A stretch of 63,670 nucleotides of DNA, the filler included, from Bigelowiella natans CCMP2755 (taxonomy: Eukaryota; Protista; Cercozoa): assembly GCA_000320545.1 (NCBI GenBank). It is 7 parts of 7 records of this genome, joined end to end, with 100 filler letters (N's around TTAATTAATTAA, not from the genome) between each part and the next. Parts side by side here need not be neighbours in the genome. Positions count along the whole stretch, not along the records: positions 17,631 to 36,650 come from ADNK01002113.1; 6 more parts are not named here. One strand, given 5' to 3'. The notes below the pieces were generated by a model. The model did no database searches. It saw only the letters and a program-made list of their open reading frames with translations, and was not told the DNA's origin. Below are positions 17,631 to 35,129 of the stretch, in pieces. The number at the start of each line of letters is the position of its first letter. The stretch's first letter is position 1. Made by a program: the position numbers and the translations under genes.

Positions 17631-22659
<5,029 letters not shown>

Positions 22660-24026
22660 GTTCACAGGCTGTGAAGGCAGGCAGCAGGGGCGCAACCAAA
22701 ATTCGCGGGAAAACCGAAGCTCATAAAAAACGAAAACTCGAGTAAAAAACCAGAAAAAACACCCAATTTTCTCTTAAAAAAGCAAAGCGAACTTCAGAAC
22801 ATCGGAAAATTCGAAAAATCTGGGATTCACCTGCGGGAACCGGTATCTCGGGGGATCCCCCGAGACTAGATTAGTCGACGCAAGAAGCACGTAGTGCACA
22901 TAGATCTACAGAACAAATCCAGCAAATTATTTTAACTAGATCTCGAACAGTTCGCACATGTGGTACCTCGCCGAAAAGGTAGGAGCACGTGTTGCCATTG
23001 TTCAACAGCAACTTAGGTTCTCTTTCGGTGGTTTTGCCCAAAATAGGGATCGAACAGCTTCACCATGATGTCCGTGGCCGCATGACGTACACGTTCTGGT
23101 TCCACGTTGTTGAGAGTCCTTCGACGTTTCTCCTGTGGTTTCCAGCACTATTTCATGTCTCTCAGACCTGGAGCTAGCAGAAGACCTGTGGAAATGGCCT
23201 GCTGAAATCCAACATCATTTGGCCGATGGAGTCCAATGTGCTCATTTCCCATGTTTGGTGGTCATGGCGATCTGAAAAAATAAATCTTCCAAGATCGGCA
23301 AGCAACCAGATGTACATTTATCACAACCACTGTGCCCCACAGAAATGCATACGGGTTCTGCAAAGCTCTGGGTGCTTCTGGATTCTCTGAATCTCAGCAT
23401 ACGCAGAGACAAATCGGAGTGATGTTTGAGACCATTCGCCTAGATTTTGAAGCATGGAGCGATTTCCTAATTTCCGTAATTCCCTCACTAATGTCACGTT
23501 TTTTTCTGAATGCCCTGCAATCTGCGCGAAACTCTTAACATTGTTGGAAAACGATCCATTATTGGAGTAGAAATTTGGAGTTGTGAAATTAGTTCCCCAT
23601 GGAAAAACCTCGCAAGCTGTGTCTCACGAGTCCGCTCATTTTCTCTTAGAAATTGACCAATATGTTTTGAGCATTGAACAAAAAGCAACGGGTCATGAAC
23701 TTCATCTATTTTCCATGGAATTCATGGGTCGCAAGGCCAACAAGCCCACGAACTACAGGACGTCGGAAGATAAAGGTGATCTATCATATCCAGAAAGATG
23801 TGAAACCAGTCACAGCAAAACCCCTCGTGTTTGCATGAATAGACAAGCGAATCGATACAAGTAAGAAAGAAACGTCCTAGGTTCCGATACATCTCTGCAG
23901 ATGCATGCTGACGATCGGTCTGGATATTGCAGTTTGCCTGAGTCTTACCTGCTGTACTCGAGCGTGGGACCCTACTTCTCGTGCCCTTCCCTGCTCATCG
24001 CGCCAAAACCGGAAGGCCACAGAATT

Positions 24027-25423: not shown

Positions 25424-27565
25424 AGTAGTGAATCGTTTTGGGGAGGACGATGACGGAGTCAGCTGCTCGTTATTTGTTCGATAGTCATTATTTTGTCAAT
25501 TAAGGTTGTATATAATCGAGCCCTATCCATTGCTCACGTGTTCCTAGTCACTCGCTACTGAAGGCAGTTTCTACTAACCATTGCCAGCTGTGTCTGCAGC
25601 CACCACAGCGTTTGTGTTTCCACCCGCAAATTTTACCATTGTGGGCAGCGAGTTGGAGGCTTGGAGATTTCAAAAGTGTGTACAGTCCGAGGAATGAACA
25701 AAATTCAGCAGGTAATTTTTTATTGCTCGAAGCAAAAGGCAATTTACGCTCCCCGACAGTTTTTTGTTCGTTCGATTTGGTCGGGAGGTCTCCGTGTGTA
25801 AATTCTAAGTGTAATACCCTTGTCGTATATGCCGCACGTAAAGATAATCTGTCGTCGCGTGGCGTGCGTGTCGATCAGCACACTGCTATATTTTCATCTA
25901 AACTCTTTTTGAAATAGAAATTCCTAGTATTCTAGCTTGATGCTGCATGTTGCGAATGATATGACGGAACGGCATGCACATATACATGCACGAGCTATAT
26001 ACATATGCACATATTACGTATCATAAGAACAGCTATCACATACGCATATGCGCAATATAGACGGCGTCGAGCGTGTCGTGCATACTGGACTCTTATATAT
26101 AAAATACGCACATGGTCGACCTGCTACTGTGTCTAAAGCGTGGATGTGAGATGTATATAAGTGAACGATGTAGGCATGTGTACAGCATGCACGAGTTGAA
26201 TTCTATTTGACTGCATGCAATGTACATGTTAGGGTACCCAGTAACCTTCCTCTATAATTATTATAGCTGGTAATGGCGTGGCGCGTACGCACATGGCCGT
26301 TGTAGACATCTCCCTTCTATCTACAGTCCTTGCAGAGCGGCAACGCCACTACATATTACGTACATAGTACATACCACTGTCCTAAGCGTAATCCTCACCA
26401 CATACAACACACGTGCGCGATGGCATGCATGTGAAAACAATCAAATCAAATAACGGTTCCTGATGATAAATGGAATCTACATGACAATTCAAAAGCTAAC
26501 ATTTTGTTAACTGTACGCCTAGATTCTTGGCTGAATAATACGAACTAGTAAGCTTAAATCTTTACAGATAACGTTTCAAATCTATACAAATAAATTTTAG
26601 ATCCTCGGAGATAAGACATGGGTGAATGTTTCTGGAATATATGATGTATTTTATATGATATATACGTTTGTTAGAGAGAGAGAGAGGATCTTTGTATTAT
26701 ATGATTTTTGAGGATCTTTGTAATATATGATTTTTTTCAAATCTCAAACGCTTAGGGTTCCGAGAAGGGGCGGCGCTCATAACATGATTTTATGTTATTA
26801 TTCTAGATGTGATGTCGTAGCGGATTTTCCCAGGTGGATTCTCCTGTGTTTGCATTGTGCCAATACGCCTGTCCCGTGACTTCGTCCTCATATTCTGTCC
26901 ACCCATTGCTTCTCTCGGCTGCTCTCGTGCTCGTGATCTGGCCTGGAGTCATGCAACCGTTGGTTTTTCCTGTACGATGGGGAGTAAAGTAATGATAAGA
27001 TGAATGAACAAGATGGCACCAGAAAAGATGTGTTGAAACCCCTGAACTTTTGTGTACATGCCCTCATATTTAATCATCGTTTCGCGGCACGACCTTCACG
27101 CGCATTCGGACTTGTCGAACGCGGAGATGCCGAAATGCTTCTCGGGGAGAATTCTTGAGTGTTTCCGAGCATAACGTCATCCGTGACTCCGAGGGTCCCC
27201 ATTCGTCCGATGGGAGGTACACCCACGGCCCCTTCATTGCTAAAAAAGATGCGATATGAAGAGGAGGGGGAGGAAATTAAATGATGCACCAATTGCCTCC
27301 TTCCTACTGTGTATCATGCATGCACGTTGTGAATGGCGCGGAATAGGTTACCTCGATGTTTGTGTTTCTCCTCCTGAGGGGCCACAGGCTTCGTTCATTA
27401 TCTTTACGACTGCCTGCTTGTCGTTGCTAAGCTGTCCTTGAACTGTGACTCTGCCAGCCAGAAACTACAAACGCAAGTATATCAAGCACACGTTATTTTG
27501 TGGATTTTACCACGATGACACACAACTGTATTGCTTACTCACCTCTCTTCTCCCCCCCCCCCCTC

Positions 27566-29247
27566 TTACACTTCTACATAGGTACTAACCTGCTTGCTCG
27601 TCTTAGTTTCAGCTGCGATGTTTCGACGGTAGAGGTTCCATCCACATCCAATAAGAATGATAACGCTTCCGACAGCAGCAATAACGACTATCGCAACTTG
27701 CGAGTAATCCGAATCGTCCACCTTCTCGCTGTCCTCCTTACTTTCATCACCAATGTCGATGAGGGTGGGGGAGGATACGCTCTCTACCGTCAAGTTTAGT
27801 GCTCGGGTAAGATTCTGAACCGGTGTTGTCGCGACCTGGCTAGCTAGTGACTCGCCGCTGTTGTCAACGAAGGTGATCTCTGCGACAATGCTGCCCGGGG
27901 AGAAGACAACTACGAAGCTGCTTTCTTCCACGCCAAGCATGTCTGCGAGCCTTCTCTTGAAGCGCCGGCGGAACTGATTATTGACTGAGTCGAAGCTCCC
28001 CGTAACCCGAACTCGCAGCCGGTACTGTTTCCGCGCGGTTGGCGCCGTGGTGGGTGCTCGAGATGGTCTTGGCGTCGGTGCTGGAGCCGGGGAAGGGCGC
28101 GGAGTCGGCCTAGTGCTGATGCTAGTGGTGGGCCGAGCAGTCGGTTCAGAAGTATCTGAGCCTGGAGACGGGCTCGGCGTTGGTCGCGGAGTTGGGCCAG
28201 GAGACGGCCTTGGCGTTGGTCGCGGAGTTGGGCCTGGAGACGGCCTTGGCGTTGGGAATGGGGTTGGCCTTGGCGTTGGGCGTGGTGTTGGCCCGGGAGA
28301 TGGCATTGGCGTTGGGAATGGGGTTGGGCCGGGAGATGGCCTTCGCGTAGGTGTGGACGTCAAAGGGTCCAGATTGGCTTCCCCCCATGCTGGCGTTGTC
28401 CCCACACAACTCTTGCAGGCGTTTGAGAGCCACCAGTGCGGAGTCTCTGCGGGGGAGCGAGCCTTGTTCGCCTCGAAGCTGCCGCAGTCCAGGCACGCAT
28501 CGTTGAACGACCAGCGCGGCTTCGGCACTGCCGGAGTGCTGATGGGCAGCCAGGAGATGACCCGCGAACGAACGTAGCAGGTTGAGTAGAAGATAGGGTC
28601 TTTGGCGTCATTGGTTGTGAGGAACTCCGGATCCGTGATCGTAGCTGCGCGTGCCTCCACCCCATAGCAAACCATAGGACGCTTGCTCTTTGGAGCGCTG
28701 CTGGCGATCGCCGTGTGTTTGGCCTCTGACCGAGCGACGGAAATCTTCTTAAAGGCGAGGTAGCGGCCCCCGTTCCCGCGCGCTCGTAAGCGGAGAAATC
28801 GCCCCTTCTTACCGGCACAATTAACTAGGATGGGACAGAGCATCTCACCACGGCGACGATTTTTGGATTCACAGTTTTGTGGTCTCGTTACCACCTCGCA
28901 CACGTCCTCATCGGCGCTACGGCATTGATTGTCTGTGCATGCTACGTCGCTGAGCGCGACAACAACCCCCTCGTCCGATCCCTTAAAAGGTCCCCACGCA
29001 ATGGCAGGGCCGGTCGGCGAAAACGTGTTGGCTGGGAGGCCGTTAAGCGACTGCTGGTAGAGGTCGAAGATGGAGAAATATCCAGTATTTTTGTTCGAAA
29101 GTACGTGAAGCCGATTCGGTTTGTAGCACTTCTGCTTCGCAGTGAAGAACCACCAGTGCGTACATCTCGGCTGGAAAGTGGCACCCGAAGTCTGAGGACA
29201 GAAAGGGTAATTACTGATGGGTATGGACGACATACATTCATGTATCG

Positions 29248-29292
<45 letters not shown>

Positions 29293-29510
29293 TCTTTGCG
29301 TGCGCGTCGGTAGGATATTTGAGGGGTGCCCAACCTCGTCAGGAAATTTAGCGGTCGAGTAGCTGTTCGTTCGTGGAAGATCAATAGAGACATAGCCAAC
29401 GCCGGAATTCTGATCGTCAAGCTCCAGCTGCCACCAGGCTGCTTTTGTGTCCATGGCTTTTGGCGCCCACGCCTCGGGGTATGAATCTTGCAGACGATCG
29501 ATCTACACAT

Positions 29511-29566
<56 letters not shown>

Positions 29567-30111
29567 CTGATTATATTTATATTTAGGCATGCGTGTGCGA
29601 AAACTTGCACATCACAAAGCCTTCTTTGGTTTAGCACAGAATTCAGCACTACCTGGATCCAGTGTATGTCAGGACACAGCAGCTCTTCTTCGGAGCCAGT
29701 GGTGTAGCGATCCCGCACGGTCCCGCCCAACGACGTCAAGGTCAAGCGCCCGTCGTTCACCTCCACGGTGATGTACTTCGTCGTGTACATCTCGTCGTTT
29801 TGGTTGCGCAGGAACTTGGCGCTCTCCATCGCGCACCCCACCCCCCGGTAAAGGCCATCGAAGCCCCCGGTGTAGATCGTGACGACGTACACCCCGTTAG
29901 CGACTGCTATTTCCCACTCATTCATGGCGCCGCCCGGGCACTTGGTTCTCCAGGAGCCCTTCGGCGCCTTCCCCGTTAGAACACCGGTGTTAGACGTGTC
30001 GATTGTCGGCCGGTTTGTCTGGATGGCCATATTAATCGCGCATTTCCATCCGTAGCTGAGTCCTGAGTGCATTCGAACAGACACACACTTATTCACTACT
30101 CTGGTGCGCGC

Positions 30112-30152
<41 letters not shown>

Positions 30153-31381
30153 CGAAAGCTTGTACTACCATTGCCACGATCTCCAAACGTCTTTCCGCTG
30201 TCAATATTCCAGCCAGTGCCAAGATTGATGGTGAAGGGGTTGCCATTGTACACAGGATTTTCGGGCTGGAAGCTGATCTTTGTGCGATAATGGTTACTGT
30301 CGGTCCAAGTTGCGGGATTTGTGTACCCGGCGGGGGCGGACACACTAGGAGAGGGAGGATCGTCCGGCTTCTCATACCTGGGCAAGGATAATTGAAAGGG
30401 GGTAGGTAAGATCGCGAGTGACGAGAAGAAAGGGGACAAGTCAAAGGAAACCTCCCCCCCTTCTCACCAACTCATCATTTATCCCCACTTACAGAGTCCA
30501 GCCCGTCGTCGCAATAAGATTGGTGTTGCTCTTTCGGCAGACCCGAACAGTTTTGCCGCTACCCTTGGAAAGGGTACTGATATCGGCCCCATTGTGCTGC
30601 CAGGCAATGGCCCAGCAGTCCCCGTGGATGCACTCATCGAGCGCATCGATGAAGTTAGAGAAGGTCGGGCCTCGATTGCAGCGCGTATCGGCCCTGACGG
30701 CCTTGGCGCTGTTAACAAATCGGGTCCAATTGTACGTAGAGGACGTCTCCGTGCCGGTGTGCTTCATGTAGGGCGACGAGAGGCTAAACGGGAAAATATT
30801 AGGGCGGGGGGGAGCACGAGGAGGAGGTTGAAGAAATCAAGCGAGTTGCAAGTTGCACTACTCTCATTGAGGGGCAGGGGGGGGGGGGGGAGAGAGGAGA
30901 GAGAAAGGAGAGAGAGGAAGAATACGTTTGCAGCATCATTACCCAACGCCGATATAGTCCCTCGGCCATCGAAGACCGGTGACGTCAGGCTCGGTGACGG
31001 GGGAGAACGGGATGGCCCTAACATCACTCACGCTTGCAAGGGATGCGGGGGCAGGAAAGTGCGCAAGTGGCACGACGTTTAGCCCGAGGTTCCCAAGAGC
31101 CTCTCCCCTGCCTGCAATCTCGAGCTGATTGAGGCAAGTGCTCACGTTGTCAGTAGCAGGGTAGATACCTGCATGATATTTGATATTGTATTCACCGCTG
31201 CAAGTTGGCCTTAGAACCCCCCCCCCCCCTGAATCTCCTACATCCCTCTCCCTAAGGCTGATGTTCCTGCTGCGTGTTCCTCACCGGTGGCGATGCCGGC
31301 TGGCTGCACAAACTGACAGTGGTCGATTCTGTTGATTTCGTACGTTCCTGTGTCGTTGCCGTAGATAAGTTCCTGCGGTAC

Positions 31382-31426
<45 letters not shown>

Positions 31427-33142
31427 GTGTGTGGTGTATAGCGAAGCAGAGTAGAACCTGGCTGAAATGCGCATGCACATCGACAGCGTCATAGTAGCCG
31501 TTCCAGAACCAATGCACGATGTGGTGGGCGTTCGTGCCCTGTCGACGGGGCACTGGCATGCAGATGATGTCGGCATCGCGAGGCATATGCGCAATATGCG
31601 GGTATCTCATCGCCCCGATGATCCATGGGTACTGACATAACAAAACGAGAAATCAATTAGTCCTACGTCGGGTGCTGCATCGTCGTGTCGCTACATATGC
31701 TGCAAGAAAGTGCAACCTTTGGATTGTCGTATATAACGTAGCGATCCTCCTGCCGAAGATTGCTCTTCCACCGATGCAGGGTTCCGGAGGGATACTTGGT
31801 GTGATCGCAAAAGTCGGCGTCCGTTGGCTGCACTGCCCCGGTGAAATACGCTGTGTTCTGGCATGCAGCGCCGTCGCGACACCAGTGCAGTCGCGGCTTA
31901 GTAGCTGCCTGATTGGCCGATGCGGGAGCGCTGTCGACGTAGTCCTTCACCCAGTCCTTGTACTCATTCTGCCATATGTAGTCCTCGTCGTCGCCGTTGA
32001 TGATTACAAAGTAGGTGTCGCGGCCGTGGCCCGTCGCCCATTTGACGGCCATCTCCTGCCCGGGCCCCAGCTGAGCGTGCACGTCGGTGGATCGACGCTG
32101 GCGGAAGGGATTCGTCGTCGACGCCTCGAACATTGCCCGCCCGGGACTACGGAGCCAGTTATGCGCCGCTGCGGGGCGCGCTTGCAGGAGGAAGGCCGTA
32201 GCTGCTGTCAGCGCCGGGGACGCACCCCGAAATAATGCCCCCCCGCGCGCGCCCAGCAACCCCATGACTGCGAAAAGAATTGCTGGTGCGAATGCAGCTG
32301 ATGCCTTGACAGGAACGCTATCAGCCTGAGAGTGGCGATTACTACTATCGGGAATTCCAGCGGTTTTTGACGCAGCAGCCCCTGCTGCCGGTTCTGTAGA
32401 CTCCTTGTTGACACTGGACGGAGCAGCTTGCAGATTGGCCGCCTGCGACTCTTTACACGGACAGAAACGCCTCGCGGATGGATGGCTGGAGTAGCAGCTG
32501 GCCTCGAGGCGATAAGACGCGCCGGGAGCTGAGACGCACAGAGACTTTGGAGAAGAGCTGGGGGACAGGGAGGAGCTGATGCCGTTGTAGAAGCACGCCC
32601 CGGTATTGTCCATGGCCGGCGCTACGGAGGCGCACGAGGGCTTATACGGTAGTGGGCAACCAGAGATCGATGCAAGCGTGGACTCCATTCCTGTCGTTAC
32701 AACACAGACACAACACACAAGGCGAACGAGAATGTCGCATTCAGATGAGGGCTGCAGAATTTGGAAGAGGAAGGAGGGGTTTGGAAGGCAGTTGTCAGGT
32801 CCTTATTTACCGTTGGGTGTGTTGACTGCTGCAGCCCTCAGCGCTGCCCCATCGCATACTTTACTTCCTCCAGCCATCGATGCACAGAATTCAGAGCAAG
32901 AGACGCCGAGTGGGGCCACGCCCCAGGAGGGAGAGGGCGAGGAGGAAGGTGGAGATGCTTCGGTGAGCTGGAGGTCCGTACCCGTGCCTGGAAAGTCGCC
33001 CGTTGGAATCGCTTTTCGGATGTTGGGCTCGACGCCGTTAGGGTAGTAAAAATAGCCTACGATACGCGCGCGCGCGCACACACACACGCACACACATGCA
33101 GATTCCCAAATGACCACAAATATAAATTGAAATGTAGCACAC

Positions 33143-33179
<37 letters not shown>

Positions 33180-33916
33180 GGGTGGCGATCAAGCCCAGCG
33201 GGTTTGACAGGAAGACGTACCAGTATTCGCTGGGCCTATCTTAATGAGAGCATGAAAAGTAATCGTGCCAGTTCCTGCGGGGGGTGCTTTAAAACGGAAC
33301 TCAACCTGCAACGGCTTCAAGTCGGCCTGGGCGTGCATGATACATTCCTGCCATAGCCAGTGCCAACAACACCACAGGTATGTTAGAACTACAAACATAA
33401 GTAAAATTATTGGCCGGCCACTCACTAAAAATACATATTCCATTTTCATAAGACCACCCATGTACGGAAATGGTTATGCATATGCATACAAAGATTCCGT
33501 TAGATTCGAGAGACCTTTCCCACTGTCGGGTTCCAAAACTCCCGGTTCTCGGCGTCATTGCCGGTGGTCTGCCACTGGCCGACATGGCGAGAGGAGGAGC
33601 TGGACGCATGCAGGACCAGCCCGCGATACTTGAACGGGTAGCGATTCACTTCGAGCACAACTGTTATCCATTCCTGGGGCACGTAGGATGTTCTGCCGGT
33701 ATCCTTGAGGCGCAGCGTATACATGCTCGAGTATTTCGGCCGCCCAGCCCAGTTCATCGACAAGATGACGTTCTGCCGGCAGTCGAGGAAGTCACCCTTA
33801 TGCCAGTCTCGAGGGTCGCAGCCGATATCGGCCATCGCGTCAAAGCAGTACGGAGCGCCGGAGCCTAGCTTTCCGTTGGACGCGGCATCTGTTGCGACAA
33901 ACAAGTTATATGCAAT

Positions 33917-33953
<37 letters not shown>

Positions 33954-34081
33954 TTATTTATACAAATAAGCTCGGGTATCAAGGGTCATCGTCTCATTTC
34001 AAAATGATAGAACTAACCGGTAAGTGAGGCGATTGCTCCGAGGCACAAGACCCAAACGGCAATCTGCTCGATCCTGCGCAT
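27566..34081 (-). CDS. Large cell-surface polyprotein: signal peptide, Reeler, Cys-rich domain, TM/GPI-like segment, internal signal peptide, His-brace (LPMO-like) domain, CBM-like beta-sandwich, F-type lectin/F5-8C-like domain, Pro/Thr stalk, SEA-like domain, TM
   Basis: ATG at 34081 (MRRIEQIAVWVLCLGAIASLT). About a dozen GT-AG exons; the junctions I checked are phase-consistent (e.g. 32811^32690 G|GA ATG; 31717^31631 K|Y). Reeler motifs YVPQEWITVVL..FKYRGLVLHA..VGQW..CIMH..K..VEFRFKAPPAGTGTITFHAL. TM VAIVVIAAVGSVIILIGCGW. The cytoplasmic tail may splice on to further exons down to about 27070. Confidence 0.8.
28040..28360 (-). repeat. Coding tandem repeat, PTPRPSPG/PTPF mucin-like stalk
   Basis: 12/24/36-nt units such as GGAGACGGCCTTGGCGTTGGTCGCGGAGTTGGGCC recur on the + strand. 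The minus strand translates to (PSPGPTPRPTPR)n. Confidence 0.9.
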
Positions 34082-35129
34082 GATGATACGCGTCTTGTTC
34101 GTTTGGGAGAGGGAGAGGGAGAGGCCGGAATGATGCGTGGGTTATATTCGTTAAGATAGAAAATAGAAGGGAGGGGACGGGGTAGCGCAGGCGGTGCTAT
34201 CGTTGTTCTCTTCCGTGTTTTTTATGTTCACGCTAGATGGGATGTGGACAGCTGAGAAAGTGGAGTGAGACTCGGATCCTATCTCAGCCCCATATCTTCT
34301 GAAAACGCCCCCCCATTTCCGCAGCCGGTAAAGTCTGGGGACGAATTCCATGAAATTCGCGGGCTACGCCGCGCACGTGCAGAGAGGCGACTCCCAGCTT
34401 CCAGCACGTGGGAGGAAACGAAGAAAAACGCCAAAAGAAACGCCCATTCCGCTATTTGAGACGTAAAAAACAATAGTTTTTTGAAATTCGACAACATTTC
34501 AGAGTTGACGCGAATCCATTTATTCCCGTGTGAACCAGACGTTTTTTGCCCCAAAACACCTGGCATAGAAAGTGTGTCTGGATTAATGCTCTGCGACATG
34601 AAAAATGGTAAGTTTCATCCCGGAATCCGACCTGTTTTTATCAGAGAACGATGACACGTGCCGCGTTGTTTAATTTCCATGCAAGCTCCAGACAGACAGA
34701 CAGATCGCATTAGTTCGGGATAAAAAACGTTATTATTTTTCCCTTTGCACTGTTTACTGGTGACGTACGATGCGATGGCCCGTCAAGGCATAACGACGGC
34801 TGGCTTTACACTGATCACAAAGAAAGAACTGGGCAGATGATCTCGATTGTTGTGGCAGTTGTGGCTAGGTGTTTTTAAGGATGGACATAATTTGACCTCA
34901 ATTTAACAGGGACATGGCAGAGTGCCCAATCGGGATCCGCGATTACCTTCAAAGACAACCAAATAATTTAGATAAAAATAATTAGGATATATAATGCTTT
35001 ATAAATTTTCTAAATTCGCACACAACACAAGTCTCTGAGGGGCAAACACCCAAAAGCACTCTATTTCCTATCGGGCCTGCAGCCCAGGGCGGAAAGCGAG
35101 CTCTGCAACACAGCCTGGCTCTGAGTAGA

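What the first reader, a model, noticed from the sequence alone, without database searches (positions are those of the whole stretch)
31458..32163. Candidate new histidine-brace (LPMO-like) copper protein family domain
Seen: a roughly 200-aa domain begins at His (minus-strand codon 32163-32161) right after A-A-A: HNWLRSPGRA...; a second His lies 45 residues on in VKWATGH (32028-32026); the domain ends HHIVHWFWNGYYDAVDVH (about 31530-31470). Established: bacterial AA10 LPMOs such as CBP21 begin HGYVESPASRA and end HVILAVW...FYQAIDV, using His1, a second His and an aromatic axial residue as the copper site. Inference: both ends, the size and the His spacing fit a His-brace Ig-like fold, while the interior matches no AA9-AA17 consensus I recognise. 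It may be an undescribed protist LPMO-like family.
Basis: partly seen in the sequence, partly recalled or inferred. Interest (0 to 1): 0.92.

Follow-up and report, generated by a model that had tools for sequence, protein, structure and literature searches.

The report
Unannotated LPMO-like histidine-brace protein family
A cell-surface gene of a chlorarachniophyte alga carries a roughly 210-residue domain with the sequence hallmarks of the copper "histidine brace" of polysaccharide-oxidising LPMO enzymes, yet it belongs to a large protist family that no database names, so it is a good candidate for a new LPMO-like family.

Summary
On the minus strand, His (32163-32161) follows A-A-A, a second His lies 45 residues on (32028-32026), and the WFWNGYYDAVDV motif sits in the next exon.

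The domain defines a family of at least 233 cluster representatives from marine protists (chlorarachniophytes, a choanoflagellate, uncultured algae). All named members are called hypothetical. No Pfam, NCBIfam or PDB sequence match was found.

- In 127 of 127 homologues the domain starts with His. It follows a hydrophobic segment and a small-x-small signal-peptidase motif.
- His1, His46 and Tyr195 are practically invariant.
- Language-model look-alikes are LPMO_10 clusters.

The order is signal peptide, Reeler-like domain, Cys-rich domain, membrane hairpin with an internal signal sequence, His domain, PAN/apple and lectin-like modules, PT linker, TM helix and a WW tail.

I read it as a new LPMO-superfamily copper domain. 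Copper binding, brace geometry and activity remain untested.

The parts
34018..34081 (-). Exon 1: ATG (34081-34079) and the N-terminal signal peptide of the precursor; donor G|gt at 34018/34017
   Evidence: Read. In frame with exon 2, where the Reeler-like domain begins as in P0002/P0004.
33221..33888 (-). Exons 2 (33888-33515) and 3 (33347-33221): Reeler-like domain
   Evidence: tblastn of P0004 residues 9-178 at 53-75% identity. P0004, P0015 and others carry Pfam Reeler. The family profile hits the Spondin-1 reeler domain. The window exons alone give no Pfam hit.
32302..33056 (-). Exon 4 (33056-32811) and the start of exon 5 (32690-32302): end of the Reeler-like domain, the conserved Cys-rich module and the linker that follows it
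   Evidence: Junctions read. The module lies upstream of the His domain in 68 homologues. The profile weakly resembles a region of GnT-V.
32164..32301 (-). Membrane hairpin: hydrophobic helix (32301-32248), Arg-containing loop (32247-32218), signal-peptide-like h-region ending A-A-A (32217-32164)
   Evidence: Sequence. Across homologues the residue at -1 is A/G/S in 122/124 and the residue at -3 is A/V/T/C/S/G in 121/124. A hydrophobic 9-mer is present in 97%.
31717..32163 (-). His-brace-like domain, residues 1-149 (rest of exon 5); His1 32163-32161, His29 32079-32077, Gln31 32073-32071, His46 32028-32026
31458..31631 (-). His-brace-like domain, residues 150-207 (exon 6); Trp192, Gly194, Tyr195 (31496-31494), Asp197, Asp200
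31285..31381 (-). Exon 7: conserved C-terminal extension (IYG ... IDHCQ), HMM positions 208-240
   Evidence: pLDDT is lower (67-74) in the model.
30943..31168 (-). Exon 8: conserved linker region (NVVP motif)
30493..30783 (-). Exon 9: PAN/apple-like module
29653..30377 (-). Exons 10 (30377-30169) and 11 (30062-29653): beta-sandwich, carbohydrate-binding-module-like domain
   Evidence: Family profile positions 743-863 match the N-terminal domain of YxiM, E 1e-4. The window exon alone gives no hit.
27590..29502 (-). Exons 12-13 (inner boundaries approximate, about 29330 and 29185): F-type-lectin-like domain, Cys-rich FYSTCY module, PT-rich linker (about 28366-28036), SEA-like region, TM helix 27697-27638; likely donor CAG|gt at 27590/27589
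   Evidence: Family profile versus FBP32, E 1.6e-10. PT repeats. Sequence. tblastn.
26803..26967 (-). Terminal exon: cytoplasmic WW domain (26904-26821) and stop codon
   Evidence: Pfam WW, E 1.3e-9, 38.4 bits. P0022 and P0133 have a WW domain at the same place.

Best explanation
The domain is a new, unannotated family within the LPMO (histidine-brace) superfamily. It sits in a large type-I cell-surface protein of a chlorarachniophyte. The proposed mechanism is as follows. The precursor enters the ER through its N-terminal signal peptide, so the Reeler-like and Cys-rich modules are luminal. A first hydrophobic helix stops transfer. A short Arg-containing loop stays cytosolic. A second, signal-peptide-like segment re-initiates translocation and is cut by signal peptidase after A-A-A. 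This frees the alpha-amino group of His1. His1 (amine and ring N) and His46 then hold one copper ion in a histidine brace, with Tyr195 as the axial residue and His29/Gln31 as likely second-sphere residues. The copper domain stays tethered to the membrane by its own C-terminal TM helix. PAN/apple, beta-sandwich and F-type-lectin-like modules hold it against a glycan, where I expect it to act as an LPMO-type oxidase. The upstream fragment (Reeler-like; in some homologues cupredoxin, and in one a sub-threshold DOMON match) stays beside it and may deliver electrons. Shown: sequence features, conservation, family size, fold similarity and architecture. Inferred: cleavage, copper binding, geometry, substrate and electron transfer. 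My odds: histidine-brace copper domain about 0.8; true glycan-cleaving LPMO about 0.5.
Confidence: 0.55

Rival explanations
1. It is a histidine-brace copper protein but not a polysaccharide-cleaving enzyme. Like fungal X325/Bim1, it would be a membrane-tethered copper-binding module used for copper acquisition or another cell-surface redox task, for example with the Reeler-like or cupredoxin partner in metal reduction or uptake by marine protists.
Against: No Pfam match to the X325 family model (DUF6595) appeared in scans of 88 members at E<=5. The anchor is a TM helix, not GPI. The protein carries several lectin or CBM-type modules (PAN/apple, F-type lectin, F5/8 type C in the choanoflagellate member), which fit a glycan-directed enzyme better. 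The axial Tyr and an invariant His/Gln pair resemble catalytic LPMOs.
Confidence: 0.27
2. It is simply a divergent member of the known AA10/AA15 (Pfam LPMO_10, chitin-binding type 4) family, which is already known from algae, so it is real but not new.
Against: PF03067 did not match any of 88 members even at E<=5. The family profile finds no PDB chain at E<=10, although many AA10 and AA15 chains are there. The second His is at position 46 against 91 in TdAA15A. None of the proteins found by sequence search carries a precomputed Pfam domain.
Confidence: 0.06
3. It is a non-metal Ig-like adhesion or spacer module of a surface receptor. The conserved His residues would then serve structure or some other ligand.
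Against: An invariant His exactly at a signal-peptidase site in 127/127 homologues, with a second invariant His and an invariant late-strand Tyr, is the defining pattern of histidine-brace proteins. It has no obvious reason in a spacer.
Confidence: 0.12

Closest known systems
AA15 LPMOs (TdAA15A, PDB 5msz)
   Different: No PF03067 match. The second His is at 46 rather than 91. There is a large insertion after the second His instead of before it. The His is exposed from an internal signal sequence in most members. The protein is membrane-anchored and fused to Reeler-like and Cys-rich modules.
AA10 LPMOs (CBP21, PDB 2bem)
   Different: Bacterial or viral and soluble. The axial residue is mostly Phe. 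No sequence-profile link was found.
X325 / Bim1 LPMO-like copper proteins (LaX325, PDB 6ibh)
   Different: X325 is fungal and GPI-anchored, with an Asp as fourth copper ligand and no lectin modules (PMC10952591). No Pfam link was found. Whether an Asp ligates copper here is unknown.

Membership tests
LPMO / histidine-brace superfamily | His is the first residue of the mature protein (directly after a signal-peptidase site) | tested here: met
   127/127 homologous domains start with His. The -1 residue is A/G/S in 122/124, the -3 residue is small or aliphatic in 121/124, and a hydrophobic h-region is present in 97%. The window has A-A-A|H. Cleavage itself is inferred.
LPMO / histidine-brace superfamily | A second, invariant copper-ligand His | tested here: met
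   His46 is kept in 61/61 full-length domains.
LPMO / histidine-brace superfamily | An aromatic axial residue (Tyr or Phe) on a late beta-strand | tested here: met
   Tyr195 in 60/61 and Phe in 1/61. It lies at the start of the last strand of the model. Its position relative to the metal was not measured.
LPMO / histidine-brace superfamily | Ig/FnIII-like beta-sandwich fold shared with solved LPMOs | tested here: met
   [not shown]
LPMO / histidine-brace superfamily | T-shaped N3 copper geometry; copper binding | not testable with these tools
   No model coordinates are returned and Cu is not an available ligand. This needs a structure with Cu, or EPR/ITC.
LPMO / histidine-brace superfamily | Oxidative cleavage of a polysaccharide | not testable with these tools
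   Needs a biochemical assay.
AA10/AA15 (Pfam PF03067 LPMO_10) | Significant match to the family model | tested here: not met
   No PF03067 hit at E<=5 in 88 members, nor in the window exons. The profile finds 0 PDB chains at E<=10.
X325 / Bim1 (DUF6595) | Match to the family model; GPI anchor; Asp as fourth ligand | tested here: not met
   No Pfam hit. The anchor is a TM helix followed by a WW tail. The Asp ligand cannot be tested here.

The most novel reading that the evidence does not exclude
A new CAZy-level LPMO family whose catalytic N-terminal His is made by signal-peptidase cleavage at an internal signal sequence of a polyprotein-like precursor. Cleavage would leave a membrane-tethered Reeler-like or cupredoxin electron-donor fragment next to a membrane-tethered, lectin-guided LPMO in 1:1 stoichiometry. 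That would be a self-contained two-part extracellular copper redox machine on the surface of marine protists.
Probability: 0.3. Interest if true: 0.9.

Novelty: new variant of a known kind. Interest (0 to 1): 0.78.

Why it matters
Each new LPMO or LPMO-like family (AA14-AA17, X325) has opened new substrates or new biology. This one is widespread in marine protists, including chlorarachniophytes, a choanoflagellate and uncultured algae. It is expressed in ocean metatranscriptomes and is wholly unannotated.

If it is catalytic, it would add an oxidative glycan-cleaving activity to protist cell surfaces, with possible roles in prey handling, cell-covering remodelling or marine polysaccharide turnover. 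If it is a copper-handling protein, it bears on trace-metal acquisition in phytoplankton.

The conserved fusion to Reeler-like or cupredoxin modules would be a built-in candidate for the long-sought physiological electron donor of an LPMO. The apparent use of an internal signal sequence to create the essential free N-terminal His would be a new maturation route for this enzyme class.

Tried and rejected
- **Pfam:** scans of the window exons and of 88 family members found no AA family, LPMO_10 or DUF6595.
- **NCBIfam:** nothing.
- **PDB sequence searches:** exon 5 alone and the domain profile gave nothing relevant.
- **Foldseek:** no match at E<=1e-3 against PDB or BFVD.
- **The search for homologous proteins:** the 351-residue ORF gave no hit because of the tool's length limits on candidates. 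The domain profile and P0043 returned only unnamed relatives without Pfam domains.
- **tblastn against plasmids:** only chance hits.
- **The search for related loci:** The viral scan found no relative.
- **Read laying:** No read-level splice or transcript evidence was obtained, and those places were sent to no search afterwards.
- **Complex prediction:** This says nothing about binding.
- **Literature:** searches for LPMO or histidine brace together with chlorarachniophytes, Reeler, protist names or AA18-AA21 found no paper on this family.
- **Tandem-paralogue idea:** rejected, because the window piece holds only one copy.
- **Second AF2 model (region after the His domain):** only moderate quality (pLDDT 72). 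Only its PAN/apple sub-domain is interpreted.

Full report
**1. What is at the coordinates**

On the minus strand the sequence reads R-P-A-A-A | H-N-W-L-R-S-P-G-R-A, with the His codon at 32163-32161. Residue 46 is the His of KWATGH (32028-32026). The reading frame runs to AAG|gt at 31717. It resumes after cag| at 31631 (YPWIIG...) and runs to CAG|gt at 31458. This second exon holds HHIVHWFWNGYYDAVDVH, with Tyr195 at 31496-31494. A third short exon (31381-31285) carries a conserved IYG...IDHCQ extension.

Two results confirm the junctions:
- A family HMM covers the three pieces contiguously, at positions 1-150, 149-208 and 208-240.
- The transcript-derived orthologue P0001 maps colinearly by tblastn.

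**2. The gene around it**

The gene is much larger than the finding. The ATG lies at 34081, followed by a classical signal peptide. Exons 2-4 (33888-33515, 33347-33221, 33056-32811) and the start of exon 5 (from 32690) encode a Reeler-like domain and a Cys-rich module.

All exon lengths add up in frame from the ATG to the His codon: 64+374+127+246+527 = 1338 nt. His "1" is therefore residue 447 of the precursor.

Directly upstream of the His lie three elements:
- an 18-residue hydrophobic helix (32301-32248);
- a 10-residue loop with two Arg (32247-32218);
- a short signal-peptide-like hydrophobic stretch ending A-A-A (32217-32164).

Downstream, the exons encode the following, in order:
- a conserved linker;
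- a PAN/apple-like module;
- a beta-sandwich module resembling the N-terminal domain of YxiM, and an F-type-lectin-like domain (family profile against PDB, E 1e-4 and 1.6e-10);
- a Cys-rich module, a PT-rich linker, a SEA-like stretch and a TM helix (27697-27638).

After a likely donor at 27590 comes a terminal exon with a WW domain (Pfam E 1.3e-9).

I searched the spliced model exon by exon, by reference. I did not build, search or fold the joined protein.

**3. A real family**

phmmer of the 149 residues of exon 5 against 1.84 billion cluster representatives gave 233 hits at E<=1e-3, 72 at E<=1e-10 and 5 at E<=1e-30.

- The best hit (73% identity) is an uncharacterised protein of *Lotharella globosa*, a chlorarachniophyte.
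- Others come from *Amorphochlora amoebiformis*, *Norrisiella sphaerica*, the choanoflagellate *Diaphanoeca grandis*, the EukProt entry Colp12, and many marine metagenome and metatranscriptome contigs.
- Every source name is "hypothetical" or "uncharacterized".
- One algal contig, with light-harvesting-protein genes nearby, has the Reeler ORF directly upstream on the same strand.

The window is thus most likely chlorarachniophyte nuclear DNA.

**4. Hallmarks of a histidine brace**

In all 127 homologues whose match reaches profile position 1, that residue is His. The residue before it is Ala (89), Gly (20) or Ser (13) in 122 of 124. The residue at -3 is A/V/T/C/S/G in 121 of 124. A hydrophobic 9-mer precedes the site in 97%. 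That is the signal-peptidase -3/-1 rule.

Thirty-nine proteins have the site after an ordinary N-terminal signal peptide. Eighty-four, like the window, have it inside a longer protein.

In 61 full-length domains the near-invariant residues are as follows:

| Residue | Kept in |
|---|---|
| His1 | 60/61 |
| Trp3 | 60/61 |
| Arg9 | 59/61 |
| Pro19 | 59/61 |
| His29 | 59/61 |
| Gln31 | 60/61 |
| His46 | 61/61 |
| Tyr75 | 60/61 |
| Trp192 | 56/61 |
| Gly194 | 57/61 |
| Tyr195 | 60/61 (the other is Phe) |
| Asp200 | 60/61 |

An invariant His at a processing site, a second invariant His and an invariant late aromatic residue together make up the sequence definition of LPMO-type copper sites (PMC10952591, PMC5823890).

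**5. Fold**

The window domain is split by an intron. I therefore modelled the orthologous domain from an intronless transcript contig (L001:1161-1910, protein P0004; 54% and 57% identical to the two window exons) with a 69-sequence alignment. The model has mean pLDDT 92.3 and pTM 0.87. Its first ten residues average pLDDT 91, so the N-terminus is ordered.

|---|---|
| LaX325 | 7.5 |
| Thermus hypothetical protein TTHA1873 | 7.0 |
| AA15 TdAA15A | 7.0 |
| AA13 | 6.2 |
| Several AA10 | 5.5-5.9 |
| AA16 | 5.7 |
| AA9 | 5.1 |
| AA11 | 5.1 |

Independently, ESM Atlas look-alikes of the 210-residue domain are three LPMO_10 clusters (0.89 with 192 shared features, 0.89/188, 0.86/181) and a bacterial polysaccharide monooxygenase family.

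I could not check the brace geometry, because coordinates are not returned.

**6. Not a member of a described family**

- Pfam does not match the window exons or any of 88 family members at E<=5.
- NCBIfam gives nothing.
- A domain profile finds no PDB chain at E<=10, although AA9-AA17 and X325 chains are in that set.
- The second His lies 45 residues after His1. In TdAA15A it is His91, with axial Tyr184 (PMC5823890).
- Full-text searches found no paper on such a family.

**7. Context that bears on mechanism**

Among the 74 retrieved proteins with at least 150 residues upstream of His1, 68 of the retrieved set have the Cys-rich module upstream and 59 have the Reeler-like domain upstream. These counts include six members of clusters already represented in the set.

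- Two distinct members (P0011, P0048) carry a plastocyanin/azurin-type copper domain upstream, above Pfam's threshold.
- One member (P0141) has a sub-threshold DOMON match.
- The fusions are single ORFs in transcriptome-derived proteins, so they are not gene-prediction artefacts.
- Downstream, members carry lectin or CBM-type modules: F-type lectin, F5/8 type C, PA14, Laminin_G_3 and PAN/apple.
- Several members end in a cytoplasmic WW domain.

**8. How it most likely works**

The topology fits cleavage of an internal signal sequence. The luminal N-terminal modules are followed by a stop-transfer helix, a positively charged cytosolic loop and a signal-like segment with its A-x-A site on the luminal side. 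Cleavage would free the His1 amine that a histidine brace needs. It would also leave two membrane-tethered fragments side by side.

I propose a cell-surface copper oxidoreductase guided to a glycan by its lectin modules, possibly supplied with electrons by the upstream fragment. The main rival is an X325/Bim1-like copper-handling role. The top structural match, the membrane tether and the short loop region before the second His favour that rival. The lectin modules and the catalytic-type second-sphere residues argue against it.

**9. Expression**

Fifteen transcriptome-like contig sets of one organism hold 58-69% of the sampled words of 27566-34100. That is close to the exon share of the stretch (about 78% by my own estimate from the exon lengths). 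Three marine metatranscriptomes hold 45-51%.

**10. Verdict**

The domain is a new family-level variant of a known kind, the histidine-brace (LPMO-like) proteins. It has two unusual features worth testing: maturation at an internal signal sequence, and a conserved fusion to Reeler-like or cupredoxin modules. Copper binding, geometry and activity remain to be shown.

Noticed in passing
window 26803-26967 (minus): A WW domain (Pfam E 1.3e-9) lies on a terminal exon downstream of the apparent stop at 27566. There is a good donor (CAG|gttagt) at 27590, so the gene probably ends in a cytoplasmic WW tail, as in homologues P0022 and P0133.
   Followed up: partly
window 18000-22700 (minus): The neighbouring gene encodes a tubulin-specific chaperone D. 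Pfam ARM_TBCD_2nd matches at E 1.9e-47 and 6.2e-44 on two exons.
   Followed up: partly
[not shown]
   Followed up: yes
P0011 (L002) and P0048; P0141: Some family members have a plastocyanin/azurin-type cupredoxin upstream of the His domain, with or instead of the Reeler-like domain. In P0141 there is a sub-threshold DOMON match at that place.
   Followed up: partly
window 32812-33054 and 32302-32688 (minus): A conserved Cys-rich module lies between the Reeler-like domain and the membrane hairpin. Its profile weakly matches a region of GnT-V/MGAT5 (PDB E about 4e-5; Pfam Glyco_transf_18 at E 0.036 in three members). Its function is unknown.
   Followed up: no
window introns, e.g. 31382-31457, 33057-33220, 30063-30168, 29503-29652: The introns are full of (TA)n, (CA)n and (CT)n microsatellites.
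   Followed up: no
L003:8866-11647: On an uncultured alga's contig, with light-harvesting-protein genes nearby, a Reeler ORF sits directly upstream of the His-domain ORF on the same strand. It is probably one gene that the gene caller split.
   Followed up: partly
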